Positions 31,564 to 48,022 of a stretch of 64,000 nucleotides of DNA are shown here, piece after piece; within the stretch, counting starts at the first letter, position 1; each line of letters starts with the position of its first letter. The notes beneath the pieces are model-generated. The model was given only the letters and a program-made list of their open reading frames with translations, was not told the origin of the DNA and made no database searches. The position numbers and the translations under genes were made by a program. Location: positions 1-64,000 of the IMG/VR virus record IMGVR_UViG_3300037042_002125, one strand, 5' to 3'.

Positions 31564-32385
31564 CTAGAATATCCTTGTACGGACGTTCTCGAAACGGTGT
31601 GCCTTGATCAAAGGGAAATAAATTGTTCGGTCAATGAAGTCATCTACTTCCAATCTTGTCGCTAGTGGATCGCCTGGGACGCGCACATGGCCGTCAATGT
31701 CGATCTCAAATCCAATGCGAACACGGTACCGGTTGAGGAACCGTACCCACATACGAATACGAGGCGGGCGTACAAACTTGACGTACCTGTTGTTCGTCAT
31801 TTTGTACATGCGAGGCATGGGGGAGGTTGTTAGCCACTTCTCAAATCCGTCTGCGACGTCAGTGTCCATTGGATATAGATCAGCCCAGGAAATGAGAGTC
31901 ATTCCGTTGTCATTGCGAACGTATTCCCGGAAGGCTTTGCGAACTTTAACGCGTTCAAACAGCTTGGCTTCGTCTGCATACTGCACCAACAAAATACGCG
32001 CGTACCTGACAGCATCTTTAAAGGCTTCGTTCTCAGACACTTCCATATTGAGATCAATAGGATCAACACCCAATGTCTCGCAATCGTTCATGAAGTTCTG
32101 GATTGTGTTAGCCCAGATTTCGTTAATAGTTCCCCAGCTCTTGACTTGTGCCTTGTAGTCCTCGCCTTGAAGCATCTCATTCCAGATAGGTCTAGCGAGT
32201 TTGCTAAACGACCTTGGGTAAGCGTCTTGAAAAGGCAAACGTGCCTGGTACTTAGCAGGCACGCCAATGAGAGTCAAATCTGTCAGTTTGTCGATCGCCG
32301 AGTCAGGTTTGTTGGTGTAGCTATACGGATCAGTACGACCAGGAACTGGTAGCAGATCCGATTTTACTAACAGTTTGATTGCCAT
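31564..32385 (-). CDS. hypothetical protein (MAIKLLV start)
   Basis: Start chosen at MAIKLLVKSD, just after the upstream stop. Confidence 0.75.
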   Translation of the reverse strand: MAIKLLVKSDLLPVPGRTDPYSYTNKPDSAIDKLTDLTLIGVPAKYQARLPFQDAYPRSFSKLARPIWNEMLQGEDYKAQVKSWGTINEIWANTIQNFMNDCETLGVDPIDLNMEVSENEAFKDAVRYARILLVQYADEAKLFERVKVRKAFREYVRNDNGMTLISWADLYPMDTDVADGFEKWLTTSPMPRMYKMTNNRYVKFVRPPRIRMWVRFLNRYRVRIGFEIDIDGHVRVPGDPLATRLEVDDFIDRTIYFPLIKAHRFENVRTRIF

Positions 32386-32392
32386 GATTGTT

Positions 32393-33070
32393 TTAGTCGT
32401 TAAATATAAATTCAATCTTGGAGGCAGAACCTCCGCCAGTTACTGACAGAACATACTTCTCATCATGAGACCATTCTTTGTATCTGTCATCATAAAGCCA
32501 ACCTGCATCTGTCAAAATTTTATCGACCCCTTTAGGGGAAGTGTGAACAATCAAATGGTTATCGCCATAACGTTCACAGTTTACGCTACTGTCTGTAAAC
32601 AAGTGTATCACGTCTTTCTTAAGACGTTTTAGATCAGCAGTGTCTGCGATAACTAACAGTTTGATTGCCTTTTGATTGTTAGATGTTTCTTCATCAAGGG
32701 CAACCAAAGATTTGCCAAATACGGTGGGTCCGGAAGTCTCTATCAAACGTGCTGTGCTCTTAATTTTGTCAAGAGCTTTCTCCGCTTGCCCTTGTGTTTT
32801 AAACGTAGCATCTGGACCTGGACCAAATTGGCCGGTCTTTCCACCTTTGTCTATACTAAAGGTGCCAAGTATCCACACGCCTTCATTGAAGTCTGGACCT
32901 ATGTATCGGATAGTATCCCCAACTCGTTTCGCCTTATGTATGTCTGCAATTGATACTTCATCTCCACTCTTCTTAGCCAATTTTAGAAGAAGGTCTACAA
33001 CTGGGCCCTTAGGAGACGCCAAAGTTTGCAGACGTGCGAGTGCTTTGATTTTGAGTGGTTGGATTGACAT
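32393..33070 (-). CDS. leader-bearing multi-module hypothetical protein
   Basis: MSIQPLKIKALARLQTLA; internal STARLIETSG and AIKLLVIAD segments. Confidence 0.75.
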   Translation of the reverse strand: MSIQPLKIKALARLQTLASPKGPVVDLLLKLAKKSGDEVSIADIHKAKRVGDTIRYIGPDFNEGVWILGTFSIDKGGKTGQFGPGPDATFKTQGQAEKALDKIKSTARLIETSGPTVFGKSLVALDEETSNNQKAIKLLVIADTADLKRLKKDVIHLFTDSSVNCERYGDNHLIVHTSPKGVDKILTDAGWLYDDRYKEWSHDEKYVLSVTGGGSASKIEFIFND

Positions 33071-33611: not shown

Positions 33612-33971
33612 TCAGTATCCGTTGTAGCTAACAGTCTCAAGGGCTCCAGGGCTCAAATAAACGTGGAAAGAACCACTGTAGCGGCCAAAATTACCACCCC
33701 AGGCTCCGCTATAGGTATCAGGATACTTTGGATCGCTTTTTAGATTAAGACCTTGGGGGGGTCAACTAAAAAATCAATAATCTTTTGGCGTTCTTCGTCA
33801 CTCACTTTCTTATCCGAGAATTCCCAACGCCAGTCTGCGCCTTTTGTAGAGCGTACTCTTTTGAAGGAAATCCCTTCCCCCTTTCAAAAAGGATTCAAGA
33901 TGTTTCCCACCCAGGCTTTTCATCTTAGGGGCAGCTAAAGTTTGGAGACGTGATAGTGATTTGATTGCCAT
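33612..33971 (-). pseudogene. leader-bearing ~119-aa gene broken by two compensating homopolymer indels
   Basis: MAIKSLSRLQTLAAP...; removing one base in the G5 run (~33877-33881) and adding one in the C7 run (~33755-33761) gives one open frame to TGA 33612. Confidence 0.65.
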
Positions 33972-33996
33972 GGTTGTTCCTAAAGTTAAAACTCTA

Positions 33997-34365
33997 TTAC
34001 TTTCTGGGAAAGAAATCTATGAAACTTTTGAAGGATGGGCGGTGGTCTAAATGTAATTGCATTTTTACACCTTGTGGATCCCTCCACGCATAAGCTGACC
34101 AGGCATACTCAGGTCCTTGTCCTGCTGCTCTCCCCCTCACTGGTTTGGCATTGTGTTTAGTTTGGAGAGTTTCAAGAATGATCTGCTCTTTAGCTTTAGG
34201 TACAACTACAGTGATACAATAGTCATCATCTGTTGTGTTGGTTAGCCTGCACTTTTTAACAGAAAATCTTAGATTCTTTTTTATCCAATCTTTTGCATCC
34301 TGCTCGGTAAATAAAACCTGTGCAGCCAAACTTTGGAGACGGGCGAGGGCAAGTGTCTTGATCAT
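33997..34365 (-). CDS. leader-bearing hypothetical protein
   Basis: MIKTLALARLQSLAA. Confidence 0.75.
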   Translation of the reverse strand: MIKTLALARLQSLAAQVLFTEQDAKDWIKKNLRFSVKKCRLTNTTDDDYCITVVVPKAKEQIILETLQTKHNAKPVRGRAAGQGPEYAWSAYAWRDPQGVKMQLHLDHRPSFKSFIDFFPRK

Positions 34366-35106: not shown

Positions 35107-35376
35107 TTAGCCCCCGTACTTTCTTGACCCAGTTGCTTTGATTTTTATATCTGTGAACGTACCAGTGCTTTCACTGTGTATCCTTATGTAGCCAGATTCT
35201 TTATCAAGAGCATTTACCTGAGGTTCAGCGTCGTATCCTTTTGCCTTAAGAGCAGTTGCGCCTGCTTTTAATACTTGCCAAACTATTTTCCGCATGTCTT
35301 TAGGTTCTTTACCCTTTGCAGCCGTTGTCTTGAGACGAGCCAAAGCCATTTGTGCGATTTGTTTGTTCGATTTCAT
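35107..35376 (-). CDS. leader-bearing hypothetical protein
   Basis: MKSNKQIAQMALARLKTTAA. Confidence 0.75.
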   Translation of the reverse strand: MKSNKQIAQMALARLKTTAAKGKEPKDMRKIVWQVLKAGATALKAKGYDAEPQVNALDKESGYIRIHSESTGTFTDIKIKATGSRKYGG

Positions 35377-35414
35377 GATGGTGTTACCTTTAGTGATAAT
35401 TGATGTTTGAAACC

Positions 35415-35843
35415 TCAGTCGCGACTACCTTTAAAGCCAAAATCTTCTAACATAAGGATAGCAATGTTACTCATTCTCTGGACTGTAACGTTAAAAGTTA
35501 GATCTTTGTATTTTGCATTTTCTGCGTAGGCTAGTTTCTCACTTTTATCTTTAAAAGTGGCCTTAAATGTCTTCTGACAAAATTCTTTGAGTTTGGCGGC
35601 CTCCGTTGCAGCCTCATCTCTAGACTCAGTCTTGAATGTGTGGGAGAACATACTCCCAGTAACTACCCGTAATTCCTTAACAGAAACGGCTTTTGCTATA
35701 ACAACAGACAAAGCGATGAGAGCTCTCATCCTGTCTATTTCTGTTTGCATCTGTGCAATGCTTTCTTCTAAGTCAGACTTTGCAGCCGTTGTCTTGAGAC
35801 GGGCAACTGCCATACGAGCGATTTGTTTGTTTGATTTGATCAT
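35415..35843 (-). CDS. leader-bearing hypothetical protein
   Basis: MIKSNKQIARMAVARLKTTAA; start chosen by similarity to neighbour. Confidence 0.75.
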   Translation of the reverse strand: MIKSNKQIARMAVARLKTTAAKSDLEESIAQMQTEIDRMRALIALSVVIAKAVSVKELRVVTGSMFSHTFKTESRDEAATEAAKLKEFCQKTFKATFKDKSEKLAYAENAKYKDLTFNVTVQRMSNIAILMLEDFGFKGSRD

Positions 35844-38231: not shown

Positions 38232-39716
38232 TTAACGGATGCCCCATCTGGCATTCCACTTACCCCAACCAGTAGCAGGACTCAACGAGATTGCCACAGC
38301 ACCAGCGGCACCACGCATTTGGTTTGTACCATTAGCCGGACCAAGATTGCCGTCACCAGCCATGTGGCCTTTGATAACAAGGTTTTGCTTGAACGGTTTG
38401 ACTTCATTGTCGATTCCTGACTGTATGCTGTCTGCCAACTGAGAGTAGAAACCAGTGCGATCAACATCCAACGATATGGCCTGGCCACTAAAGTTGAACA
38501 CCTTCTCGCCCTCCGCAAGGAACTGAGCACGGAGTGTCATTACCTCCGCAAAACGCAACCAGAACTCTCGCACACTGCCAGTAGCGTTAGTCATTGTGAA
38601 GCCTGTCATCACACCTTGGGCACCATTGAAACCATCACGGCCACGGCGTAAGTATGCAAGCAAGAGTGGTGTGGTAAACAGTAGGTCCTTGCGGTGTGCA
38701 ATGGTAGTAGCACTCTTGTTTACCAAGATCCGCATGTCGTTCACTGCGCTCATGATGGACGGGTTAACAATAAAGATGCGACCGGTTTCCCTCATTTTGC
38801 CAGCAGGGTTAACCTGGTTCCAGCCTGTCCAGACAATCGTGTAGCTCTCAAGAGCAGCAGGCATGTTCAACGGTGATTGGATTACGCCTGCGTACATATA
38901 ACCGTCAGGAGTAAGTACATTGCTATTTACAGAGACTGGTGCCACCACCATGCTGTTTTCCCTGTAGACCTCGAACGTCACATACTCATAAGGTTGATCA
39001 AAAATAACATAAACAGGGATATCATTAAAGGCAAGTTCAACAACATCTTCAACTCCTTCAGGTGTAGTGTTAGGGCCAGTGACGACCAGAGATTCAAACG
39101 AGTAATAGGTCTGCCCGTTGACGGTCAAGCCCCAACGTATTTGGTAGTTCTGCCCAGACAGAGTTGGAACCATGTCAGTGGGTGTGTTGATAACGGCGCT
39201 GCCTGTGATTTTCACATCGCTGCTAAGGTTAACACCTTCATAGGAGTGGGCAACACCTGAGCTATAGACAACACCGTCACGATCAATCAAGCACCATTGG
39301 ATGTTTCCATTGGCGTAATCGAAGGGCAAGGGAAACATGAAGGACACAGAGCCTATACCAGCCTGACCTGCTTCAAGTTCACCCACCAAATCAGAGAACG
39401 CGTCAACGTTCTTGGTCTGATAGTCAGTGGCGAGATTGGAGTTGACCACTACCGCCAATGTCTTTGTGTAGATGTGCGCCTGGTCCGTGTTGACCGTTAC
39501 GTTGATACCGTAGGATTGCAGGTCAGTACCTCCCGACACCTGCAGCTCAATTACAGGTGACGACACAGATAGGACCGTCGTCGCTATCGTGTTGGGGTCT
39601 ATCTGGGTAATGGCGCCCGCGCTGATAACTTCTCCACCGACGAATACGTCTGAGAAGTCGATCTGGACTCTCCGTGTATCCTGGGGAAATTTTACGATCA
39701 CTTTACTAGATTGCAT
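38232..39716 (-). CDS. putative virion structural (neck/adaptor-like) protein
   Basis: Ig-like beta-rich N-terminal part, helical C-terminal part; context. Confidence 0.55.
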   Translation of the reverse strand: MQSSKVIVKFPQDTRRVQIDFSDVFVGGEVISAGAITQIDPNTIATTVLSVSSPVIELQVSGGTDLQSYGINVTVNTDQAHIYTKTLAVVVNSNLATDYQTKNVDAFSDLVGELEAGQAGIGSVSFMFPLPFDYANGNIQWCLIDRDGVVYSSGVAHSYEGVNLSSDVKITGSAVINTPTDMVPTLSGQNYQIRWGLTVNGQTYYSFESLVVTGPNTTPEGVEDVVELAFNDIPVYVIFDQPYEYVTFEVYRENSMVVAPVSVNSNVLTPDGYMYAGVIQSPLNMPAALESYTIVWTGWNQVNPAGKMRETGRIFIVNPSIMSAVNDMRILVNKSATTIAHRKDLLFTTPLLLAYLRRGRDGFNGAQGVMTGFTMTNATGSVREFWLRFAEVMTLRAQFLAEGEKVFNFSGQAISLDVDRTGFYSQLADSIQSGIDNEVKPFKQNLVIKGHMAGDGNLGPANGTNQMRGAAGAVAISLSPATGWGKWNARWGIR

Positions 39717-40189
39717 TGTAATTCTTTCCAAGTTAATTCATGAAAATTAGATATTCTAGTAATATGTTTAGTTTTTGGATTTACTACCCACACCCTTAAA
39801 TCAATGCCTAAACTATCTGCAGCCTTAGCTTTCATTTTGATACGTTTGAAAGTATCGAGGTCCGTTAAACCCACAGTGTACAAGCTTTTAACCTCTATAC
39901 ATATGTCTTTATTCTTGTATTTTATTCGTATGTCTGGGTAGTATAGGCTATCCTTGTTCCGTTTTGGATTGAACCACCATATTTTAGGTTGATCTCTTTT
40001 TCTAACATAAATATTCTTGGCGGGGACTTTCAACTGATTTACTAGAACGCCTAAAACATGACCTTCGTACCCTTGATAAATAAATTCCTTACCTTGCAAA
40101 CATGCAGAATGACGTAAGTATCTACTTAACAAAAATTTATCTGCAATATCTGGATCTTGACTAGGAAAATCTACACCATAGCGACGTTG
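39698..40189 (-). pseudogene. 5'-truncated PD-(D/E)xK endonuclease-like gene
   Basis: YGV..PSQ, QGYE, YYPDI, IEVKS.YT motifs; AT-rich; no convincing start. Confidence 0.65.
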
Positions 40190-40269
40190 GCATCTTCCCA
40201 CTTCTTTTCCAGCTTAGCCTTGGTGCCTTTGCCGTCTTTGACAAGTTTGTTTATGTAGGTATTTGGCAT
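40171..40269 (-). pseudogene. 32-codon partial duplicate of the 5' end of the 42218 gene
   Basis: 40190-40269 vs 42139-42218: 69/80 nt identical by manual alignment. Confidence 0.8.
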
Positions 40270-40271
40270 GG

Positions 40272-41360
40272 TTAACCCCGATTAGCTAAGTAAACGCACA
40301 GATCAAGTCTGTCCTTCCAGGTGCTCGCTATCTTTGCCAACGTGTATTTGCCCATGTCCTTGTACCACATTTTGTATTCTCCAGTGGCATCCCCTTCTCC
40401 TTCCATGTCACGCTCCAAATTCATCATAATGCTTTCACCAATATCCTTTGTGGAACGTTTGGCTAAATCATATGATACGGCTCTTCCCATGGTTGTAACG
40501 CTTAGGATGCTGCCACTGAATTCAGATTCACCAAGACCCATGTTGCTAACAGTGAACATGGCGGCAAAAAACTCCCTCTCATAGGGCTTTAGTGCTCTAT
40601 CCTTGGCTTTAAGTGCCTTTAGAGCACCGCTTGATTTTTTGACTTCACCAAACGCAGATTTGAGAAGATTGTCAAAAGCTTCCTTTGCTTGAGCTGTTGA
40701 AGAGTCTAAATCAAGAGTTATTTTTGTTACTTTAGACGTCTTGTACGGGTTAACTGTCAGATGCAGTGTATGCGGCGTACCTCGTATGCTACGCCCTTTT
40801 GCATCTTCCTCCCTTTCAATGTACACCAAAAGATTTGTGTCCTTTGCTTTGGACATCTTTATCATCAGCAAACCCTCACGAGTAGGCTCCTTAAAAGAAT
40901 ACCCCTTAAGAGACGTGCCCAAGGATTTGAGATCCATTACAGCTAAAAGCTTGTTGGCCTTAGCCACAAGTACCTGGCCTGCTTTTTGATTCTCTTCCGC
41001 GTTTGCTTGTAGAGCCTTGGCATAGGCTTTCATGGCCTTACTTGAAGCTACTTTATCAAGTTCTTTTGGCCACTCCGGTATGCTTTTTATCTTTGCAGCC
41101 AACTTCACCAAACCCTTTGCAATACCTGTTTTGTAGGTAAAAGTTGAAGGACAGTAATCACCATCAAAATCAACTTTAATATCACCAATACTTTGCGGCA
41201 TACTATATGCCGGTAGGTCATCACCCAATATTCTGTTAGTGACCCTTTCCCCCAACTTGTACATCCACTGTGAGATTTTTATCAGAAGAGAAATGTCCTC
41301 TGCAGATATAGTAGGTTTGGCCCCTAAACTTTGCAGACGTGCGAGTGCTTTGATCATCAT
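40272..41360 (-). CDS. leader-bearing hypothetical protein
   Basis: MMIKALARLQSLGA. Confidence 0.8.
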   Translation of the reverse strand: MMIKALARLQSLGAKPTISAEDISLLIKISQWMYKLGERVTNRILGDDLPAYSMPQSIGDIKVDFDGDYCPSTFTYKTGIAKGLVKLAAKIKSIPEWPKELDKVASSKAMKAYAKALQANAEENQKAGQVLVAKANKLLAVMDLKSLGTSLKGYSFKEPTREGLLMIKMSKAKDTNLLVYIEREEDAKGRSIRGTPHTLHLTVNPYKTSKVTKITLDLDSSTAQAKEAFDNLLKSAFGEVKKSSGALKALKAKDRALKPYEREFFAAMFTVSNMGLGESEFSGSILSVTTMGRAVSYDLAKRSTKDIGESIMMNLERDMEGEGDATGEYKMWYKDMGKYTLAKIASTWKDRLDLCVYLANRG

Positions 41361-41531
41361 AGTGTTTCCTTATCAATGAACTTTTTGGGATTTGGCTTTA
41401 TAGCCTGTACGGCCTTTGAACTCTTTCTTATTCAAAAGGTCTGCCTGTTTGGCTGCGTCTTGCTTGGTGAATTTCTTGGGGTTAGATCCACCTAACCAAC
41501 ACGTTACAGTTCGAGTTGACCCGCCTGTGGT

Positions 41532-42218
41532 TTATTTCCAGATTTGCCATATCCCAAATTCTTTTGGTTCTGCTGCCAAACTTTGGAGGCGAGCCAAAGC
41601 GAGTGTCTTGATTTGGGTCATGGTGTTTCCTTCTTCGGTTTCAGGTTCGGGGGTGGTCCATATTTTGGAGTAGTCGTCCATTGTGAGAACGTCTTTCTCC
41701 TTGGAGAGTTTGAGGACGGCCTCCACTACGTCGTGGAGTTCAACATCACCTTTCAGTGTCTCGCGAGCAAGCTCAAGCAAGCGTATGAACAAAGGGACAT
41801 CAACGGTTATTGTGTCGAGTGGGTCTTTTGCTGACAAGCTTACCATAGCAACATCTGCTTTCACTAAAGTTTGAAACACGCTCATAATGTGACTCCATGT
41901 ATCTGCATGACCTGCCTTGTGGACCACGTCTTCTGCCTCACGCCACTTCTGGAGCAAGAACTTCTTGTCGCCTTTACCATCTTTAATTAGCCTAGCCAAG
42001 TAGTGGTCAGGTGGTGGAGGACACATATTGGAATGAGACAACACCAAGCCTGATCCAGCAACGTGAGCCATCTTCTGGAAGATGCTCATGATATACGCCC
42101 AATCTTCTTTGTGTCCTTGTGCGGCAGCGGCTGCCTTTGCATCTTCCCATTTCTTTTCCAACTTGGCCTTGCTGCCTTTTCCCTGTTTGACAAGTTTGTT
42201 GATGTAGCTGTTGGGCAT
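41532..42218 (-). CDS. multi-module protein (two-copy helical domain, DTITVDVPLFIRLLE domain, terminal leader module)
   Basis: Internal repeat Y..KL.K.GKG.K..L..KW..A; internal MTQIKTLALARLQSLAA. Confidence 0.75.
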   Translation of the reverse strand: MPNSYINKLVKQGKGSKAKLEKKWEDAKAAAAAQGHKEDWAYIMSIFQKMAHVAGSGLVLSHSNMCPPPPDHYLARLIKDGKGDKKFLLQKWREAEDVVHKAGHADTWSHIMSVFQTLVKADVAMVSLSAKDPLDTITVDVPLFIRLLELARETLKGDVELHDVVEAVLKLSKEKDVLTMDDYSKIWTTPEPETEEGNTMTQIKTLALARLQSLAAEPKEFGIWQIWK

Positions 42219-42220
42219 GT

Positions 42221-42439
42221 TTATTTCCCAATTGAAGGGTTTACAATTATTTCGTTTAGTTGTAGAACTTTATCACTAGAGCGTGACCACAACCTGGTAC
42301 AGTCATCTAATCTCCTGCGCCTATCAAAGTCTACCTGTTGTTGGACTATACGCCTGTCTTTTATAATTCTTCGTTCTTTCAAGGCGAACGTAGCAGCGTC
42401 ATTCCGCTCGTCTTTTTGTGCTTCTGTATCCTGACCCAC
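42221..42439 (-). CDS. hypothetical protein
   Basis: Fills gap on the coding strand, GTG start. Confidence 0.45.
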   Translation of the reverse strand: MGQDTEAQKDERNDAATFALKERRIIKDRRIVQQQVDFDRRRRLDDCTRLWSRSSDKVLQLNEIIVNPSIGK

Positions 42440-42442
42440 AAG

Positions 42443-42811
42443 CTACACGTCAATGACGTCCAAATTGGACGTAACTACAAGGATGCCAGACCTAGCACAG
42501 TAATTAACCGTGGTTGAGATAGTTCCCGACTCAGGACGGAACCCACCGTATATGCCGCTTACATCGCTCCGACCGGGTGTGAAATCAAACTCGTTCAATA
42601 GAGCGTATACCTTACGACCCATCATAGGCTTACCTGCTAGAACGTGGTGCGTAAACTTGGATGGGTACGTCTTGAACGCACTGTTCTGCTTCTTGAACGG
42701 CCCTAACAAGTGAGTAAGGGCATCCATAAGAGTAGGCAGCAAGTCCTTTGCGGTGAGAGACTCACCTAGGCGTTCTGCCTGCTCTTTTGTTTTAAGTTTT
42801 CTAATTGACAT
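42443..42811 (-). CDS. hypothetical protein
   Basis: Start MSIRKL just after upstream stop. Confidence 0.7.
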   Translation of the reverse strand: MSIRKLKTKEQAERLGESLTAKDLLPTLMDALTHLLGPFKKQNSAFKTYPSKFTHHVLAGKPMMGRKVYALLNEFDFTPGRSDVSGIYGGFRPESGTISTTVNYCARSGILVVTSNLDVIDV

Positions 42812-42813
42812 AG

Positions 42814-43587
42814 TTAGGCCTTGGTAATGGTCCAAAAATCTGCAGACAAAACACGATCAGATAGATAGGCGTAAGGCATTGTGAAGTATCCCCCAAGACC
42901 CCAGTCAACACCCCAGGAGTTGCGTACTAACCCGCGTTGAGTCTCGTCATCATACCCAACGAGCAACACTGCATGGCATCCGTTGCATTTGGCCTTCGGG
43001 CCTGGCATAGGAAGCTCACCAGTGACTGCCACATCCTCAGAGTCGAATTCGTCGTAGACGTCAAAGCAGAACACAATAGGGTAACCAGACGCTAAGGTGC
43101 GCTTAACTTCCAGCATATTCTTGTCTCGGCTGACGCGGGCGTAGGCGCTTATCTTATGCTTGGCCGCCTTATCAAATACTTCGGGTGGAGGACGGATTCC
43201 TACTTTAGCAGCACGGTACGGCCATATTTCCTCCAACGGCGTACCATACTTCTCGACCACCTTGAGGCCAGTACGTATTTGCGTACCCACGTCCTTGTTG
43301 ACGGTGCGCTCTACCACGCGACCATTGTAGAACGGGAACAAACGGCTGAGATCAGAGTAGTGGTGATCGTGGTGATGCTTGATTTCCAGGTACTCCATAG
43401 CCCCAACTATTGAGTTGTAGACACAGCTACTCAAACTCGCCTGGTTCTCTACAGGAGAACAATGTGGGCGCAGATCGACCTTAGCTGGTAAGTCCTCGGC
43501 ATGTTTCAGTTTGAAGAAATCAGATGTGTGGACATATTGGTCGCGAGCGTCATGCGTGTCACGGCTGGCATTAAAACGTTCAAACAT
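42814..43587 (-). CDS. papain-like (C1A) cysteine peptidase
   Basis: LPAKVDLR, NQ....SC, GCHAVLLVGYD, RNSWG..WG..GYF. Confidence 0.92.
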   Translation of the reverse strand: MFERFNASRDTHDARDQYVHTSDFFKLKHAEDLPAKVDLRPHCSPVENQASLSSCVYNSIVGAMEYLEIKHHHDHHYSDLSRLFPFYNGRVVERTVNKDVGTQIRTGLKVVEKYGTPLEEIWPYRAAKVGIRPPPEVFDKAAKHKISAYARVSRDKNMLEVKRTLASGYPIVFCFDVYDEFDSEDVAVTGELPMPGPKAKCNGCHAVLLVGYDDETQRGLVRNSWGVDWGLGGYFTMPYAYLSDRVLSADFWTITKA

Positions 43588-43596
43588 AAAAATCCT

Positions 43597-44052
43597 TTAT
43601 AATTTACCCTTGTAACCCAATTCCTTTAATGCTTTGTCTGCATCAAGGTGTTTTGACTGTGCATACTTACGGAAGATTTCAAAGGTCTTTTTACATCCGT
43701 TTACTTCATCCTCAACAGTAGGATCTTCTTCAGAAAGCCCATCTTCCTGTATGTAGTTCAATGTCTCTAAGGCTTCTTGTACCTTACGTATTACTGCCTG
43801 TGGAAATCTTGGTACCTCAAGAGGCTTACCATCGTCACCACTTAGTGGTAAGAGTTCAAAAGATTTAACCTCTTGGTCTGTTAATTCACGTGTGTAGGTA
43901 ACAATCCCATGTCGTACCCTGTCAATACCTTCACAGTCTTTGTCATACGTGTACTCACCTTTGGGTACAGCCCCTAAACCAGGTGGTCTGTTGACAAGCC
44001 CATACCTGAACTGTTTATTTGCCAAGATTTTGTGAAGTGGTTGGATTGCCAT
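43597..44052 (-). CDS. DarA C-terminal-like domain protein
   Basis: YGLVNRPPGLGAVPKG...RHGIVTY.RELT..EV.SFEL resembles the DarA_C family. Confidence 0.7.
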   Translation of the reverse strand: MAIQPLHKILANKQFRYGLVNRPPGLGAVPKGEYTYDKDCEGIDRVRHGIVTYTRELTDQEVKSFELLPLSGDDGKPLEVPRFPQAVIRKVQEALETLNYIQEDGLSEEDPTVEDEVNGCKKTFEIFRKYAQSKHLDADKALKELGYKGKL

Positions 44053-44054
44053 TG

Positions 44055-44285
44055 TTATTCCTGGTACATTGCATCCGCTTGAACACCATTTAGAATTCCT
44101 GCAACTATTTTGGCATCTTCCTTAGAACAGGAACCTGGTGGAAAATTAAATGTCCAAGTATGGCCCTTAGACTCCCCTGATATGTGCAAAGTCATACCAG
44201 CAGTTACTTTAAGTTTTACCTTAGACATTGAAAGAGACCCTGCGGCTGTTGTAGAATGTAAACGTGCAATTGCTTTGATTGTCAT
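44055..44285 (-). CDS. leader-bearing small protein
   Basis: MTIKAIARLHSTTAA. Confidence 0.7.
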   Translation of the reverse strand: MTIKAIARLHSTTAAGSLSMSKVKLKVTAGMTLHISGESKGHTWTFNFPPGSCSKEDAKIVAGILNGVQADAMYQE

Positions 44286-44300
44286 GATTGTTCCTAAATT

Positions 44301-45152
44301 TCAATATTTCTTAGGTTCGAGGTGGGTCTTCAACTTGTTAACCAACCCCATGTCGTTCATCTTGCGAGCGCCTGTGAACACAAATGCAATGGCGAGGTTG
44401 GCTATATTTGAAGCAAGCCAAGCTACACCAAGGCCAGTAAACAAGCCTGCACCCAACAAGGTAAGCATAGTCAATCCATCTGCGCTAAGGAACAGGTCGG
44501 TCAGATCAAACTGTCCTTTGAATGCGGCTACGATCACCGCAATGTCAAAGTCAAATTGCGGGTTGCCTGTAAAGGACATTGAGAGCCATATCCAGAGCAG
44601 CAAACCTGCAAGAGCAATACCAGCCAGCTTCGTCAACAGAGGGTGGGCATGAAGAATCTCGTCGATCTTCATTGTGCCTTTTCTCAGGCCGTCAAGTGCG
44701 CCACTCTTTACCAGCGCATCAAATGCCTTGAACAGACCCTTAGGCACAAGGCTGGTAAATGCAGTGATTGCCTTCCACAATGCCTTGACATTGAATGCCA
44801 CGCCTTTGAGGAGGGCGAACACATCTTTTTGCTTGAACGCCTTAACCACTTCCTCAAAACCAACCTTGAAGTCGTTCGCAATGTCTGTCAGCAATTGCTT
44901 CAGGTCACCAAAGGCTTTTACCAGTATACCTGGGAGGCTGAAATCAAAGGCAAGGACCTCACCAACTGGCAGGCACATCTGATCCATTACCTGGCAATAG
45001 ACAGCGTAGTTGATTTCATCTGCACTGGCTATAGTAATCAGTTTAGGACCTTGTGTTAAGGCAGTCGCGAACGCGGCGCTCACTTCTGTGTTGAGCGCCA
45101 AGCGTCTCTTCAACTGATCATGGAATTGCTTCGCGTTATACGTCTGGTTCAT
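44301..45152 (-). CDS. membrane protein with C-terminal hydrophobic helices
   Basis: LAGIALAGLLLWIWL and GLTMLTLLGAGLFTGLGVAWL segments. Confidence 0.75.
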   Translation of the reverse strand: MNQTYNAKQFHDQLKRRLALNTEVSAAFATALTQGPKLITIASADEINYAVYCQVMDQMCLPVGEVLAFDFSLPGILVKAFGDLKQLLTDIANDFKVGFEEVVKAFKQKDVFALLKGVAFNVKALWKAITAFTSLVPKGLFKAFDALVKSGALDGLRKGTMKIDEILHAHPLLTKLAGIALAGLLLWIWLSMSFTGNPQFDFDIAVIVAAFKGQFDLTDLFLSADGLTMLTLLGAGLFTGLGVAWLASNIANLAIAFVFTGARKMNDMGLVNKLKTHLEPKKY

Positions 45153-45171
45153 GGTCTGTCAGTCCTTTAGA

Positions 45172-46725
45172 TTACTGAGCTTCATCTTGAATGTAATCCC
45201 AGACCTTATCTGGTATTTGTTCGAGGCTTGATGTATCCATTGAAGAATACCTGTCAACCTTCTTGACTTGAATGTAATCCCAGGCCTTATCTGGTATTTG
45301 TTCGCGGCTTGATGTATCCATTGAAGAATACCTGTCAACCTTCTTGATGTTGTTTTCCAAGAAAGCAGAAGCAAGGCGAATGTGATCGGCAGCGTCACCA
45401 ATTACCATAGCTGCCATACCCAGACCAAAATCCTCTTCTTCGTCAGAGATCCAACCAATAGCATTTTCAGCACTCAGCTCTCCCTTGAACGCATTTTTGA
45501 AGGTAAGCATACCCAAGGAATTCATCTTTGCATCTTTGCCAAGTTTTGCTTTTGGTCCCCTAGCCTTTTCAACAAGTTTGGCAACCTGTTCTACAAACTT
45601 GAGTACTTCCTCAGTACCTTTATAAAACTTTTTGTTCTTCTCGACAGCATTGAGTACCTTAGCGATACTGGCCAAGAAGTCAGCACAAGCTTCTGTAGGG
45701 CCTAAAGCCTTGGCCTTACTGTAAGCTGCCTTGAGAATCTTAGGAGCATTCTGATCTACAATTTTGTAGATTTCTGCCAAGTTATCTTCTTCGGTATCGT
45801 GCTCAAGAACATCTTCAGCAGGTTTTTTGCCTGCGTTCTTGGCAGGTTTGGATTGCTTTGCCAACTTGTTTGCCAGGTCCAAAGTGAGAGTAAACACCTT
45901 GTTAGGTCCAAGCTCTGGGCTTATCATGCGAATCTTTTTGCCGTCTGCTGATTTACGCACACCAAATTTTTCACCAGGGCCAAGGGTCAACTTAGTCCCT
46001 GCCCCAGATTTAAGAGGAAGACTTTTCCCTTTATAGATAAACCAATCATAGGCAGATTCTCCTTTGGGGGTCGCAATGGCCTGGAGGCGGGCACTTGACT
46101 CTTCTTTGATCTTGGTAGTCCTGACTACGGCTGAGTGCATGCCTTTGCCAGCTTTGTAACCTTTTTGGTCATTGTAGTCAGAGGCAAATTTATCAGCCTT
46201 TGCTTTATCAGTAAACGTCTTTAACAGATCGTAGTCAGGGCCGCCTGCCCTATCACCTTTGACCTTGTGGTAGACGTAAAAGGTAGTCGCAATGGCTTGG
46301 AGGCGGGCGAGTGCTTGAATCTGGGTCTTGATTGTAGTCATGGTATGGTCTTCCTTTGATTGTGATGCCATTGCGTTCGTGTCGTCGATGTTGACGGCGT
46401 TGATAAGTGTTACTATCCGTTGGTACCAGCCATCGCATATACCGTCGAGATAGGACGAAAGGTGTTGCATTGCCCGCAAAGCTTCTTGGCGAGACTTAGC
46501 CCCAATGAGATTGGTGTAAGCCTTACGGACATACGGCAAGGCTTTTTCATAAGGGAGAGCCTTTGATCGTCCAGCGTAATCGGTGCTACCAGGTGTGATG
46601 ATCCTTTCCAGAGAATCACCGAGGTGTTCAAGAGCTTCTAGGGCAGCAGGGAACATGCAGTCTTGCGTAGGACCCGCGGTCACAGAATTTTTCCAAGGGC
46701 TAGGTATGTTGGTATTGCTCATCAT
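45172..46725 (-). CDS. multi-module protein with two internal leader motifs
   Basis: IQALARLQAIA and SSARLQAIA; C-terminal 27-aa duplication. Confidence 0.8.
   Translation of the reverse strand: MMSNTNIPSPWKNSVTAGPTQDCMFPAALEALEHLGDSLERIITPGSTDYAGRSKALPYEKALPYVRKAYTNLIGAKSRQEALRAMQHLSSYLDGICDGWYQRIVTLINAVNIDDTNAMASQSKEDHTMTTIKTQIQALARLQAIATTFYVYHKVKGDRAGGPDYDLLKTFTDKAKADKFASDYNDQKGYKAGKGMHSAVVRTTKIKEESSARLQAIATPKGESAYDWFIYKGKSLPLKSGAGTKLTLGPGEKFGVRKSADGKKIRMISPELGPNKVFTLTLDLANKLAKQSKPAKNAGKKPAEDVLEHDTEEDNLAEIYKIVDQNAPKILKAAYSKAKALGPTEACADFLASIAKVLNAVEKNKKFYKGTEEVLKFVEQVAKLVEKARGPKAKLGKDAKMNSLGMLTFKNAFKGELSAENAIGWISDEEEDFGLGMAAMVIGDAADHIRLASAFLENNIKKVDRYSSMDTSSREQIPDKAWDYIQVKKVDRYSSMDTSSLEQIPDKVWDYIQDEAQ
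45186..45347. repeat. 81-bp tandem duplication (2 mismatches)
   Basis: 45186-45266 vs 45267-45347, in frame. Confidence 0.95.
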
Positions 46726-47987
46726 TCATTGTCCATGTTGATAATGTCAATAACGCGGCGCAGTTTCTTAGCGTCAAGACCAAATTGGTCTTGAAGGAAG
46801 TCAATGTCATTCACGCTAACTTTATTCTCAGGCGACAGGTTGGTCAAGGTAAACTTGATTACCTTAGGGTCTGTGCCTTGGTCAATCTTCATGCTAACGG
46901 TTGCCTTCTTGATCTTAGCAAAAATACCCTTAACGTCTTTGAGAAGGGAAACGGCAACCGCTTGTATGTCCTTGGCCTTAACGCCCTTCTTGAGCATAAA
47001 GTTGATTGAGCTAGGGGTGAACTCAATGCTCTCAATGCTCTGGCTAGCCTCAAATTTACCTTTAGGGTAATCATCTGGGTTGAGGTTGTGAGGTTGAGTA
47101 CCGATAGCTGTATAGATGTTTTCCATCTCCAGCATGGTACCTAGCATGGTTGCAGCTTCTTTAGAAGAAGTGACCTTACGACCCAAGGCGTATTTGCCAG
47201 GTGTGGCAAAATCATGCATCACAGTCAAGTAGTAAATTGTCTCTACTTTTGTCAAATCCTTGGTAGGTTTCAATACGCAATTGAACACAATGTAGAACTT
47301 GGGATAGATATTACCTTCGTCATCTGTGAGGCTGGTGAGTTCGAGATAGACGGCAAATGCCAAGTTGCCTTCTTTTGTCTCATACCCGTACATAAAAGTC
47401 TTGTGGGATTTGAACGTCAACTCCGGGCTAACTTGGGTGATTGTGTCTTTAATCAAGTCCTTAAAGTTCTTAGGAGTATGGCGCTCGCCAATGTCACCCA
47501 AGAAGGTAAGTGCCTTATCTAAAGAGGATTTTGCGGTACGTTGCAGGCTTTTGATTGCCTTGAGCATCTCGTTAGAACCGCGGATGCCCCTAAAGTTAAC
47601 CGACGTAGAGTTGTACAGCTTGTCTAAGTCATCGACCTTGTCTGCTATCTCGTCAACGATGGTGAAGTTCTTTCTAAGCACATCGATCTTTGGGATAACG
47701 ACCTTATCAATGATGTCTGTATTGATGGTATTTCCGCCTTTAGGTTTTCTAGGACCTTTAGGTGTGTTTACATCAATGTCAAAGATGATTGACTCGGCGG
47801 CAGTAACAGGAGATTGGACCCTTGAGAATTGCAGCTGGTATTGTTTTATCAAACCATCCAAATCCTGAAGATCATTCTCAATCCCGTCCAGATATTTTTG
47901 CACCTCTTGTAAGGACCGAAATGCACCTTCTGCAATCTCCACAATCCTGGGGACTTGTTTGATGAGGTGAAGTGGTTTAATTGACAT
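46722..47987 (-). CDS. putative virion protein
   Basis: 421 aa, MSIKPLH start, VTAA motif, context. Confidence 0.65.
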   Translation of the reverse strand: MSIKPLHLIKQVPRIVEIAEGAFRSLQEVQKYLDGIENDLQDLDGLIKQYQLQFSRVQSPVTAAESIIFDIDVNTPKGPRKPKGGNTINTDIIDKVVIPKIDVLRKNFTIVDEIADKVDDLDKLYNSTSVNFRGIRGSNEMLKAIKSLQRTAKSSLDKALTFLGDIGERHTPKNFKDLIKDTITQVSPELTFKSHKTFMYGYETKEGNLAFAVYLELTSLTDDEGNIYPKFYIVFNCVLKPTKDLTKVETIYYLTVMHDFATPGKYALGRKVTSSKEAATMLGTMLEMENIYTAIGTQPHNLNPDDYPKGKFEASQSIESIEFTPSSINFMLKKGVKAKDIQAVAVSLLKDVKGIFAKIKKATVSMKIDQGTDPKVIKFTLTNLSPENKVSVNDIDFLQDQFGLDAKKLRRVIDIINMDNE

Positions 47988-48022
47988 AGTTAGCCCTAAT
48001 GATTATTTCTATCAAAATTAAA

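What the first reader, a model, noticed from the sequence alone, without database searches (positions are those of the whole stretch)
41373..46341. Leader modules nested in-frame inside larger ORFs, each with its own RBS
Seen: inside ORF 41532-42218, ATG 41621 follows GAAGGAAACACC. Inside ORF 45172-46725, ATG 46341 follows AAGGAAGACCATACC. Both open with the ARL leader, and the second ORF repeats ARLQAIAT ~70 aa later with near-identical DNA. ORF 32393-33070 is also a chain of modules and shares an 18-nt block (ACTAACAGTTTGATTGCC) with the start of the 32385 gene. Inference: cargo genes fuse into polyproteins whose leaders double as processing sites, or these loci yield long and short in-frame products.
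Basis: partly seen in the sequence, partly recalled or inferred. Interest (0 to 1): 0.65.

Follow-up and report, generated by a model that had tools for sequence, protein, structure and literature searches.

The report
Leader-tagged cargo genes fused in frame
In an uncultured 222-kb jumbo phage, a row of small genes that all start with the same ~20-residue "ARLQ" leader is shuffled between strains at that leader. Several of these genes are truly fused in frame into longer multi-module proteins, which most resembles the capsid-targeted injected proteins of phage T4.

Summary
ATG 41621 and ATG 46341 each follow a ribosome-binding site, open the shared ARLQ leader, and lie in frame inside ORFs 41532-42218 and 45172-46725. 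Contigs from another sample reproduce both junctions exactly.

The window is the start of a 222-kb jumbo myophage related to Ralstonia phiRSL1 and Burkholderia BCSR5. The leader occurs 11 times, only between 32.7 and 46.3 kb. It sits in front of mostly basic small modules beside the head-tail connector, and it is also found in phiRSL1, BCSR5 and metagenomic relatives.

The long ORFs are real:
- The upstream parts show purifying selection (synonymous:non-synonymous 17:0 and 12:1).
- Sister strains keep the fusions with different cargo, one with ATT instead of the internal ATG.
- Distant relatives have the same domain-leader-cargo layout with no internal Met.
- Other modules are free-standing genes elsewhere.
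- Strain-to-strain homology breaks fall almost all inside leader or start blocks.

Best reading: a hypervariable cassette array of probably capsid-packaged proteins, like T4 capsid-targeting-sequence (CTS) internal proteins. The leader DNA serves as the recombination joint, and in-frame fusions are tolerated or used.

Two things remain inference: cleavage at internal leaders and a second, shorter product. This is a new variant of a known kind.

The parts
45172..46725 (-). ORF A, 517 aa: a chain of N-part A, leader 1, small module, leader 2, KMPT-N module and C-part
   Evidence: The same N-part A is fused in frame to three other leader-cargo versions in strains L008, L009 and X3.
46342..46725 (-). 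N-part A (residues 1-128). It has no leader, is acidic (pI 5.9), and its ATG overlaps the stop of the upstream gene.
   Evidence: 12 synonymous versus 1 non-synonymous change against L008/L009. It is a stand-alone 102-121-aa protein in distant relatives P0043 and P0047. pI.
46285..46356 (-). Ribosome-binding site AAGGAAGACCATACC (46356-46342), ATG 46341 and leader 1 (MTTIKTQIQALARLQAIAT)
   Evidence: Homology to strains breaks at 46358, 46297 and 46285.
46099..46284 (-). Small basic module (TFYVYHK...TTKIKEE)
   Evidence: In L008 it is the N-terminal module of a separate 234-aa gene that has its own leader. pI 9.6.
46060..46098 (-). Leader 2 (SSARLQAIATPKG), internal, with no ATG and no ribosome-binding site
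   Evidence: D10. In X5/L006 and L008 everything downstream of 46094/46087 is replaced by other sequence.
45850..46050 (-). KMPT-N domain module (PF20294, residues 226-292)
   Evidence: E = 2e-7. It is a free-standing leader-bearing gene in BCSR5 (94 aa) and phiRSL1 ORF210.
45186..45347 (-). 81-nt tandem duplication (98% identical) giving a repeated 27-aa C-terminus
   Evidence: D4; translation
41532..42218 (-). ORF B, 228 aa: N-part B (domains D1, D1', D2), then leader, then 9 residues and a stop
   Evidence: Variants of 270-273 aa with other cargo are in L004/L005, L006/L007 and P0030.
41622..42218 (-). N-part B (residues 1-199): two D1 repeats plus a D2 domain (DVPLFIRLLELARE...)
   Evidence: Synonymous:non-synonymous 17:0, 13:2 and 16:2 between strains. 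D1 followed by an internal leader is found in phiRSL1 ORF112 and BCSR5. D2-leader-cargo is found in P0031, P0035 and P0037. The AlphaFold2 (AF2) model shows helical domains.
41562..41633 (-). Ribosome-binding site GAAGGAAACACC (41633-41622), ATG 41621 and leader (MTQIKTLALARLQSLAAEPK)
   Evidence: The sister strain has ATT in place of ATG with the same ribosome-binding site. Homology breaks at 41630 and 41620.
41373..41561 (-). Small basic cargo module interrupted by an in-frame TAA (41534-41532). The frame stays open to TGA 41375-41373.
   Evidence: read by eye. The intact paralogous module is seen in L006/P0030. The TAA is identical in X2 contigs.
32393..33070 (-). ORF C, 225 aa: leader, module 1, degenerate internal leader (STARLIETSGP, 32758-32726) and the 92-aa module (32669-32396)
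   Evidence: L006/L041 has the same module 1, then STACLQSLAAP, then a different module 2. The 92-aa module is a separate gene with TAA, ribosome-binding site and ATG in L041-L043 and the 217-kb genome.
40272..41360 (-). Leader-bearing gene, 362 aa (MMIKALARLQSLGAKP...)
   Evidence: Its homologue P0018 carries another leader version (MTAIKTQIQALSRLQ) and lies upstream of the N-part B gene in the sister genome.
44055..44285 (-). Leader-bearing gene, 76 aa (MTIKAIARLHSTTAAG...)
   Evidence: Absent in strains X3/X5/L008 and partly deleted in X4 between two start blocks.
33810..34365 (-). Two leader-bearing genes: 33997-34365 (122 aa) and 33810-33971 (53 aa)
   Evidence: Replaced by other cargo genes in L006 and L042, with breaks at 34358 and 34328.
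35107..35843 (-). Two paralogous leader-bearing genes: 35107-35376 and 35415-35843 (M.KSNKQIA.MA.ARLKTTAAK)
   Evidence: D6, 71 nt at 85%
43597..44052 (-). DarA_C-domain protein, 151 aa, inside the cluster; no ARLQ leader
   Evidence: PF18789 E = 2e-13. phrog_1926, 'released from the phage upon host infection', E = 1.5e-13.
42814..43587 (-). Papain-family (C1) cysteine peptidase, 257 aa, inside the cluster
   Evidence: PF00112 E = 3e-15. No homologue in phiRSL1 or BCSR5.
38232..39731 (-). Head-tail connector/adaptor protein flanking the cluster
   Evidence: phrog_17327 E = 3e-55 and PF23148. 34-39% identical to phiRSL1 ORF118 and others.
39698..40274 (-). 88-nt relic of the start of N-part B (40274-40187), followed by a DUF7487/TnsA-like endonuclease ORF (40201-39698) that sister strains lack
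   Evidence: D3, 85%; PF24308 E = 1.4e-14; sister gene order: 367-aa gene, N-part B gene, connector

Best explanation
The 32-47 kb stretch is a hypervariable array of cargo cassettes in the head/neck module of a phiRSL1-like jumbo myophage.

Each cassette is one ~60-nt block followed by an unrelated, usually small and basic, module. The block holds a ribosome-binding site, an ATG and the leader M-x-I-K-x-L-A-L-A-R-L-Q-S/T-L-A-A-(P-K).

The leader is a tag found across this phage clade. It most likely directs proteins into the assembling head, and perhaps marks them for trimming, as the capsid targeting sequence (CTS) does for T4 internal proteins.

Because the leader DNA is repeated, it also acts as the homologous joint at which strains swap, delete and join cassettes.

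The two nested leaders are junctions of real in-frame fusions:
- A translated upstream gene (N-part A or N-part B) has no stop codon, so ribosomes read on through the old ribosome-binding site, ATG and leader into the next module.
- For N-part B the layout 'D1/D2 domains - leader - cargo' is ancient and usually lacks an internal Met, so the leader also works inside a protein.
- For N-part A the fusion is specific to this lineage.
- ORF 32393-33070 is a deletion that welded module 1 to a gene that is free-standing in sister strains.

Shown: the fusions are real, conserved, under purifying selection and modular, and exchange points sit at leaders.

Inferred: head targeting; cleavage or docking at internal leaders; optional extra initiation at ATG 41621 and 46341.
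For: Fusions real:
- Identical contigs in a second sample.
- Purifying selection on both upstream parts: synonymous:non-synonymous 17:0, 13:2 and 16:2 for N-part B, 12:1 for N-part A.

Fusions kept with other cargo:
- N-part B joined to three different leader-cargo tails, one starting with ATT.
- N-part A joined to four versions, all in frame.

Ancient layout:
- phiRSL1 ORF112 and the BCSR5 120734-121366 ORF have D1 followed by an internal leader.
- P0031 has two internal leaders and no internal Met; P0035 and P0037 likewise.

Modules free-standing elsewhere.

Exchange at leaders: homology breaks at 46358, 46297, 46094/46087, 41630, 41620, 34358, 34328, 33057, 32750, 32669 and 44303/44052 all lie in leader or start blocks.

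Leader found across the clade: 8 copies in BCSR5, at least 8 in phiRSL1, 9 in L038.

Head link:
- The cluster abuts the connector. In phiRSL1 a leader gene lies between the protease and the major head protein.
- A DarA_C / 'released upon infection' gene sits in the cluster.
- Leader-following modules are basic, pI 9.3-11.5, while the N-parts are acidic.
- T4 internal proteins (Ip) share only an N-terminal packaging leader and sit in a genomic hotspot (PMC9026906, PMC12373910).

The AlphaFold2 (AF2) model puts the leader in a low-confidence linker between folded domains.
Against: - There is no virion proteomics or N-terminal mapping for this phage or any relative in the papers I could reach.
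- The leaders have no consistent protease-type motif. A Glu follows at variable distance or not at all, whereas the major head protein has a conserved L/A-A-T-E-Y.
- The leader-protease complex prediction gave no verdict.
- A leader-like N-terminus also occurs after the tail-tube gene at genome position 121355, so the address may not be the head alone.
- In-frame status within one lineage is largely inherited, not repeatedly re-derived.
- Short contigs in metagenomes can be chimeric at repeats.
Confidence: 0.62

Rival explanations
1. Designed nested genes. Each long ORF is meant to give two products: the full fusion, and a shorter leader-cargo protein started at the internal ribosome-binding site and ATG. 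Examples recalled from my own knowledge are lambda C/Nu3 and T4 gp21/gp21s.
For: - Both window junctions keep a good ribosome-binding site at normal spacing.
- L006, L008, L009, P0030 and the X3 contig also keep an ATG at the junction.
- T4 gp21 has an essential internal start (PMC9026906).
Against: - The start is not conserved: ATT in four contigs of the sister strain, and no Met in P0031, P0035, P0037 or BCSR5.
- Two internal leaders in the window have no ribosome-binding site or ATG.
- The short product from ATG 41621 would be only 29 aa because of the TAA.
- The ribosome-binding site and ATG are explained simply as part of the cassette that recombined in.
Confidence: 0.3
2. True polyproteins. 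The leader is above all a cleavage site, and the head maturation protease or another protease cuts the chains into separate modules. N-terminal leaders are then just the left-over half-site.
For: - Internal leaders without starts lie exactly at module borders.
- The leader sits in a flexible linker in the AlphaFold2 (AF2) model.
- A conserved head maturation protease is present, phrog_18299 E = 1e-77.
- T4 and SPN3US head proteins lose propeptides at motif sites (PMC9026906, PMC10052503).
Against: - No conserved scissile motif shared with the major head protein.
- The invariant residues (A-x-R-L) look like one face of an amphipathic helix, that is, a docking element.
- No mass-spectrometry data exist.
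- The complex prediction gave no verdict.
- The C1 peptidase in the cluster is absent from phiRSL1 and BCSR5, which do have the leader.
Confidence: 0.35
3. The leader is a docking or sorting helix for something other than the head interior, such as neck/tail assembly, a membrane site, or recognition by the AAA-type ATPase encoded beside the major head protein. The fusions would then be neutral by-products of recombination between repeats.
For: - A leader-like start follows the tail-tube gene at 121355.
- The cluster flanks the connector rather than the major head protein in this genome.
- An ATPase gene lies next to the head genes here and in phiRSL1.
- Iyer et al. speculated that jumbo-phage AAA+ proteins load folded proteins into heads (PMC7824862).
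Against: - The basic cargo, the DarA_C gene and the T4-like hotspot behaviour fit packaged and injected proteins better.
- The conserved D1/D2-leader-cargo layout across distant phages argues against neutrality.
Confidence: 0.15
4. Artefact or mis-annotation. The long ORFs would come from assembly errors, or the upstream in-frame stretches would not be translated.
For: - The genome is a metagenomic assembly, and the repeats (the leaders) are the places where assemblers fail. Many contigs end there.
Against: - Independent samples and assemblers (Logan, JGI, ENA) give the same junctions.
- The upstream parts are under strong purifying selection and have homologues.
Confidence: 0.03

Closest known systems
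T4 / T-even internal proteins with the capsid targeting sequence (CTS) (PMC9026906; PMC12373910; Repoila 1994 as cited there)
   Same: - Otherwise unrelated, small, basic proteins share only a short N-terminal leader.
- The genes sit in a strain-variable hotspot among head genes.
- The leader can carry foreign cargo, and fusions are tolerated.
   Different: - The sequence is unrelated (about 20 aa, A-L-A-R-L-Q core, against the 10-aa T4 CTS that ends in L/I-x-E).
- No Glu cleavage motif.
- The leader also occurs inside proteins, behind conserved D1/D2 domains.
- Packaging and injection have not been shown.
Mobile regulatory cassettes (PeSL promoter-stem-loop motifs) that mediate modular shuffling in T4-type genomes (PMC2839356, PMC4122927)
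   Same: Short conserved repeats at gene starts are the joints for insertion, deletion and replacement of variable genes between close strains.
   Different: - Here the repeat is a ribosome-binding site plus coding leader, not a promoter or terminator. The promoter/terminator scan showed no enrichment.
- Recombination can therefore weld proteins in frame.
Phage P1 Dar system: DarA, Hdf and DarB packaged in the head and ejected (PMC12810830, PMC9024508)
   Same: - A DarA_C-domain gene lies in the cluster.
- A very large SNF2 helicase (1527 aa) is nearby.
- The theme of head-internal proteins co-injected with the DNA.
   Different: - Only one small domain is shared.
- No DarA hexon-binding region, Hdf or DarB methyltransferase was identified.
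- Dar proteins do not share a common leader.
Propeptide-bearing ejection proteins of phiKZ-like and SPN3US giant phages (PMC5694885, PMC10052503)
   Same: Jumbo myophage with many head-associated proteins that may carry removable N-terminal regions of variable length, including long ones.
   Different: - A different phage lineage.
- Those propeptides are defined by an S/A/G-x-E cleavage motif found by mass spectrometry. No such motif or data exist here.
In-frame nested genes in head assembly: lambda C/Nu3 (my own knowledge) and T4 gp21/gp21s (PMC9026906)
   Same: An internal ribosome-binding site and ATG lie in the same frame as a longer ORF in a head gene region.
   Different: The internal start is not conserved among strains or relatives, and two internal leaders lack a start altogether.
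Polymorphic-toxin cassette systems (Rhs, CdiA with a conserved pre-toxin motif and orphan tips; my own knowledge)
   Same: A conserved short motif marks the border between a constant N-part and swappable C-terminal modules, and spare modules lie nearby carrying the same motif.
   Different: This is a phage structural region, not a secretion system. No toxin/immunity pairs are present, and the modules are also expressed as free genes.

Membership tests
T4-type CTS / internal-protein system | Short conserved N-terminal peptide shared by otherwise unrelated proteins | tested here: met
   11 copies in the window. Apart from two paralogous gene pairs (35107/35415; the small modules of ORFs A and B), cargo modules match each other only over the leader in all-against-all BLASTP.
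T4-type CTS / internal-protein system | Genes form a strain-variable hotspot within the head gene region | tested here: met
   Cassettes differ between about-95%-identical strains. The cluster abuts the connector, and in phiRSL1 it lies next to the protease and major head protein.
T4-type CTS / internal-protein system | Leader ends in the prohead-protease cleavage motif (L/I-x-E in T4) and is removed | tested here: not met
   No Glu at a fixed position after the leader. The phiRSL1 leaders often have A/S-T-E, but this phage's do not. Removal itself is not testable here.
T4-type CTS / internal-protein system | Proteins are present in the mature head and injected | not testable with these tools
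   Uncultured phage. No proteomics for relatives in the reachable literature.
T4-type CTS / internal-protein system | Sequence homology of the leader to the T4 CTS | not tested
   No alignment to a T4 sequence was run. From the description in PMC9026906 (10 residues, processing at positions 8-10) the two differ in length and motif.
Protease-processed polyprotein | Several independently folding modules in one ORF, separated by linkers | tested here: met
   Module borders coincide with free-standing genes elsewhere. The AlphaFold2 (AF2) model shows folded domains joined by a low-pLDDT linker containing the leader.
Protease-processed polyprotein | Defined cleavage sites cut by a cognate protease | tested here: inconclusive
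   A head maturation protease is present. The leader-protease complex prediction gave no verdict. No cleavage data.
Nested in-frame genes with internal initiation | Internal ribosome-binding site and start codon in frame | tested here: met
   41633-41619 and 46356-46339
Nested in-frame genes with internal initiation | Internal start conserved in relatives | tested here: not met
   ATT in L004/L005 and two further contigs. No Met in P0031, P0035, P0037 or the BCSR5 ORF.
P1 Dar system | DarA with hexon-binding N-domain, plus Hdf and DarB partners | tested here: not met
   Only the DarA_C domain is found, in a 151-aa protein. The SNF2 helicase has no detected methyltransferase.
PeSL-type mobile regulatory cassettes | Conserved promoter-stem-loop motif flanking variable genes | tested here: not met
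   Promoter-like and terminator-like sites are not enriched (16 found against 22.6 expected; 18 against 16.6) and are not at cassette borders. The repeat here is a ribosome-binding site plus leader.

The most novel reading that the evidence does not exclude
One ~60-nt element does four jobs at once in phiRSL1-like jumbo phages: translation start, address label for loading into the head, protease or docking site, and homologous joint for cassette exchange. Because the joint is coding and frame-preserving, the phage can string injectable cargo into polyproteins behind a conserved D1/D2 'carrier' domain and release it inside the capsid or the host. This would be a previously undescribed, clade-wide packaging code that works both at the N-terminus and internally.
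Probability: 0.3. Interest if true: 0.75.

Novelty: new variant of a known kind. Interest (0 to 1): 0.6.

Why it matters
- If the ARLQ leader is a head-loading tag, it gives a simple sequence rule for listing the injected protein arsenal, probably anti-defence proteins, of a whole clade of jumbo phages. That clade includes cultured Ralstonia, Burkholderia and Achromobacter phages, where nearly all these genes are 'hypothetical'.
- It would also be a second, independent example of the T4 CTS principle. Here the tag also works inside fusion proteins, and its DNA drives cargo shuffling between strains.
- This is directly testable in phiRSL1 or BCSR5.
- It would be useful as a natural handle for packaging foreign proteins into large capsids.
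- For annotation, it warns that gene callers will both merge and split these cassettes.

Tried and rejected
- **Megablast of 40-47 kb against 50,697 phage records:** no match.
- **IMG/VR scans with both long ORFs:** no relatives.
- **A 19-column leader profile searched in BCSR5 and phiRSL1:** too short, E = 0.015-0.05 only. I replaced it with regular-expression scans of the whole genomes.
- **Pfam, PHROGs and ESM Atlas for N-part A and N-part B:** nothing.
- **Foldseek of the AlphaFold2 (AF2) model:** against PDB, nothing below E = 1. Against viral models, only uncharacterised phage proteins, including Motura, phiRSL1 ORF112 and BcepSauron.
- **Complex prediction, head protease with the first 45 residues of the 33997-34365 protein:** no verdict, so no evidence either way.
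- **Promoter/terminator scan:** no enrichment.
- **Literature:** no paper describing this leader. The phiRSL1 genome paper is not held.

Ideas considered and dropped:
- An alternative genetic code for the TAA at 41532. Nothing in the genome calls for it, and it is a single nonsense codon in one paralogue.
- The C1 peptidase as the general leader protease. It is absent from phiRSL1 and BCSR5.
- An apparent 'leader fused to N-part B' joint in run X4. It turned out to be an effect of the laid stretch ending at 41300, and it reflects the sister gene order.

Full report
**Observation**

- On the minus strand, ORF 41532-42218 (228 aa) contains GAAGGAAACACC (41633-41622), then ATG 41621 and MTQIKTLALARLQSLAAEPK.
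- ORF 45172-46725 (517 aa) contains AAGGAAGACCATACC (46356-46342), then ATG 46341 and MTTIKTQIQALARLQAIAT.
- ARLQAIAT recurs 72 codons later, with 22 of 23 nucleotides identical.
- The 18-nt block occurs twice, at 32366-32383 and 32652-32669; 0.02 copies are expected by chance.
- A six-frame scan of the whole genome finds the leader core only between 32.7 and 46.3 kb, always on the minus strand. There are 11 copies counting the ARLH variant at 44267. Nine have a ribosome-binding site of the type (A)GGAAAC, then 3-6 nt, then ATG. Two are internal without any start.
- One addition: the leader at 41621 is followed after 28 codons by TAA (41534-41532). The same frame then runs open for 52 more codons to 41373.

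**Context**

- The window is the first 64 kb of a single 222,078-bp contig.
- Its connector, major head protein, sheath, head protease and a 1527-aa SNF2 helicase are 33-53% identical to those of Ralstonia phage phiRSL1. The connector also matches Burkholderia BCSR5 and BcepSauron and Achromobacter Motura at 34-39%.
- It is therefore an uncultured phiRSL1-like jumbo myophage. It is found in sediment and lake-water metagenomes of several studies.
- The leader cluster flanks the head-tail connector (38232-39731).
- The cluster also holds a DarA_C-domain protein (PF18789, E = 2e-13; phrog_1926 'released from the phage upon host infection') and a papain-family peptidase.

**The leader is a feature of the whole clade**

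- BCSR5 has eight genes starting MKIEAAARL(K/Q)A..LLAAPK.
- phiRSL1 has ORF111, 120, 123, 124, 127, 133 and 210 starting M..I.AA..RL.AT(E). ORF133 lies between the head protease and the major head protein.
- A more distant metagenomic relative (L038) has nine.
- Evidence: - The shared core is A-x-R-L, often followed by A-A-P-K.
- I found no paper that describes it.

**Are the long ORFs real?**

- Contigs of another sample and study (X2) match 41300-43017 and 46244-46800 without a single difference. Only contigs, not raw reads, were available.
- Between strains about 95% identical, the upstream parts show almost only synonymous changes. N-part B: 17:0, 13:2 and 16:2. N-part A: 12:1.
- Both upstream parts are therefore translated in the annotated frame. 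With no stop codon, translation must continue into the leader and cargo.

**Locus B (41373-42218)**

- N-part B is made of two D1 repeats and a D2 domain (DVPLFIRLLELARE...).
- Sister strains keep N-part B and the linker PEPETEE but carry other tails:
  - ATT-NIKALSRLQSLSALSPQK plus a 60-aa cargo (273 aa; four contigs from four samples).
  - ATG-INTQALARLQTLAKDE plus an intact small beta-alpha module (270 aa).
  - Evidence: - phiRSL1 ORF112 and a BCSR5 ORF are D1, then an internal leader, then cargo. The BCSR5 leader has no Met.
- Metagenomic relatives at 42-59% identity show D1D2-leader-cargo-leader-cargo (P0031) and D2-leader-cargo (P0035, P0037), all without an internal Met.
- This layout is therefore old, and the leader works inside a protein.
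- An AlphaFold2 (AF2) model of the 270-aa form (mean pLDDT 71) shows helical D1, D1' and D2, a low-confidence linker (residues 190-212) that holds the leader, and a small beta-beta-beta-alpha-beta cargo.
- In the window itself the cargo is cut short by the TAA. It looks like a decaying paralogue.

**Locus A (45172-46725)**

- N-part A is a free-standing 102-121-aa protein in distant relatives.
- In every strain of this lineage it runs in frame into a ribosome-binding site, ATG and leader, but the tail differs:
  - Leader plus small module plus leader 2 plus KMPT-N plus C-part in the window.
  - Another leader plus a 190-aa cargo in L008.
  - A 3-nt shorter leader in L009.
  - A further leader in a short X3 contig.
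  - Evidence: - In L008 the small module heads its own 234-aa gene.
- The KMPT-N module is a separate leader-bearing gene in BCSR5 and phiRSL1.

**Locus C (32393-33070)**

- L006/L041 has the same module 1, then the internal leader STACLQSLAAP, then a different module 2.
- The window's second module is a separate 92-aa gene (TAA, ribosome-binding site, ATG-GCA-ATC-AAA) in four strains.
- The window has AAAAG where the free-standing 92-aa gene carries its ATG.

**Exchange points**

- Homology between the window and the strain contigs ends at 46358, 46297, 46094/46087, 41630, 41620, 34358, 34328, 33057, 32750, 32669 and 44303/44052. All of these lie in leader or start blocks.
- The repeated block of ribosome-binding site plus leader is thus the joint for cassette swap, loss and fusion.
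- This is functionally like the mobile regulatory cassettes of T4-type phages (PMC2839356, PMC4122927), except that here the joint is coding.
- Promoter-like and terminator-like sites are not enriched.

**What the leader does (inference)**

The closest model is the T4 capsid targeting sequence (CTS). T4 internal proteins (Ip) share only an N-terminal leader that loads them into the prohead, are basic, are injected, and lie in a strain-variable hotspot (PMC9026906, PMC12373910).

In favour:
- The position among head and neck genes.
- The DarA_C gene in the cluster.
- The basic character of ten of the eleven leader-following modules (pI 9.3-11.5) against acidic N-parts.

Against, or open:
- No fixed Glu-type cleavage motif is present, although the major head protein has a conserved L/A-A-T-E-Y.
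- There are no proteomics data.
- A leader-like start lies after the tail-tube gene at 121355.
- The leader-protease complex prediction gave no verdict.

**Long product, short product or cleavage**

- The long products are close to certain.
- A second product from ATG 46341 is possible. From ATG 41621 it would be only 29 aa.
- The internal start is not conserved, so I read the ribosome-binding site and ATG mainly as the footprint of a free-standing cassette recombined in.
- Cleavage or docking at internal leaders is plausible but untested.

**Verdict**

It is a new variant of a known kind: CTS-like tagged cargo in a shuffling hotspot. It has two unusual features. The tag also sits inside conserved fusion proteins, and its DNA is the recombination joint.

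Noticed in passing
window 41373-41534 (minus strand): An in-frame TAA (41534-41532) cuts the small cargo module nine residues after the leader. The remaining 52 codons are still open and resemble intact modules in L006/P0030. The TAA is identical in a second sample, so this looks like a recently pseudogenised cargo.
   Followed up: partly
window 39698-40274: An 88-nt relic (85% identical) of the start of N-part B sits right after the 362-aa gene, which is the gene order seen in sister strains. It is followed by a DUF7487/TnsA-like endonuclease ORF that the sister strains lack. This suggests a homing-endonuclease-type insertion linked to the local rearrangement.
   Followed up: partly
window 45186-45347: A perfect-register 81-nt tandem duplication (98% identical) doubles the last 27 residues of the 517-aa ORF.
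   Followed up: no
window 42791-42821, 44032-44062, 47967-47997 and others: A second family of shared gene starts: a ribosome-binding site plus M-(A/S)-I-(K/Q/R), often followed by P-L-H. It occurs on genes without the ARLQ core (the DarA_C protein, the 421-aa protein, the 122-aa protein, NUDIX). About half of all such starts in the genome lie between 32 and 48 kb.
   Followed up: partly
genome 121355 (+), outside the window (locus L011): The 125-aa gene after the tail-tube gene starts MAIKQATRLKTVALSTE. This is leader-like but lies in the tail module.
   Followed up: no
window 42814-43587: A papain-family (C1) cysteine peptidase is encoded inside the cargo cluster. It is conserved in the sister strains but has no homologue in phiRSL1 or BCSR5, and it carries no leader.
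   Followed up: partly
window 1-26000: There is a sharp change in composition. Bases 1-10 kb are 34-37% GC with plus-strand genes. Bases 12-26 kb are 47-57% GC with giant minus-strand ORFs that look like tail fibres (Peptidase_S74 chaperone, collagen repeats, Gly-rich and Ig-like domains).
   Followed up: partly
L006 2-649 and L008 2992-3696: The variant 234-aa protein ends with a leader-like AIARLQELVA followed by 14 residues and a stop. This is a leader at the C-terminal end with no cargo, like the window's ORF B.
   Followed up: no
window 44301-45152: This 283-aa protein in the cluster has a long hydrophobic, probably membrane-spanning, C-terminal half. No family was assigned.
   Followed up: no
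L006 5611-6231: The sister strain carries an extra 206-aa gene between the 125-aa gene and the HNH endonuclease gene. The window lacks it.
   Followed up: no
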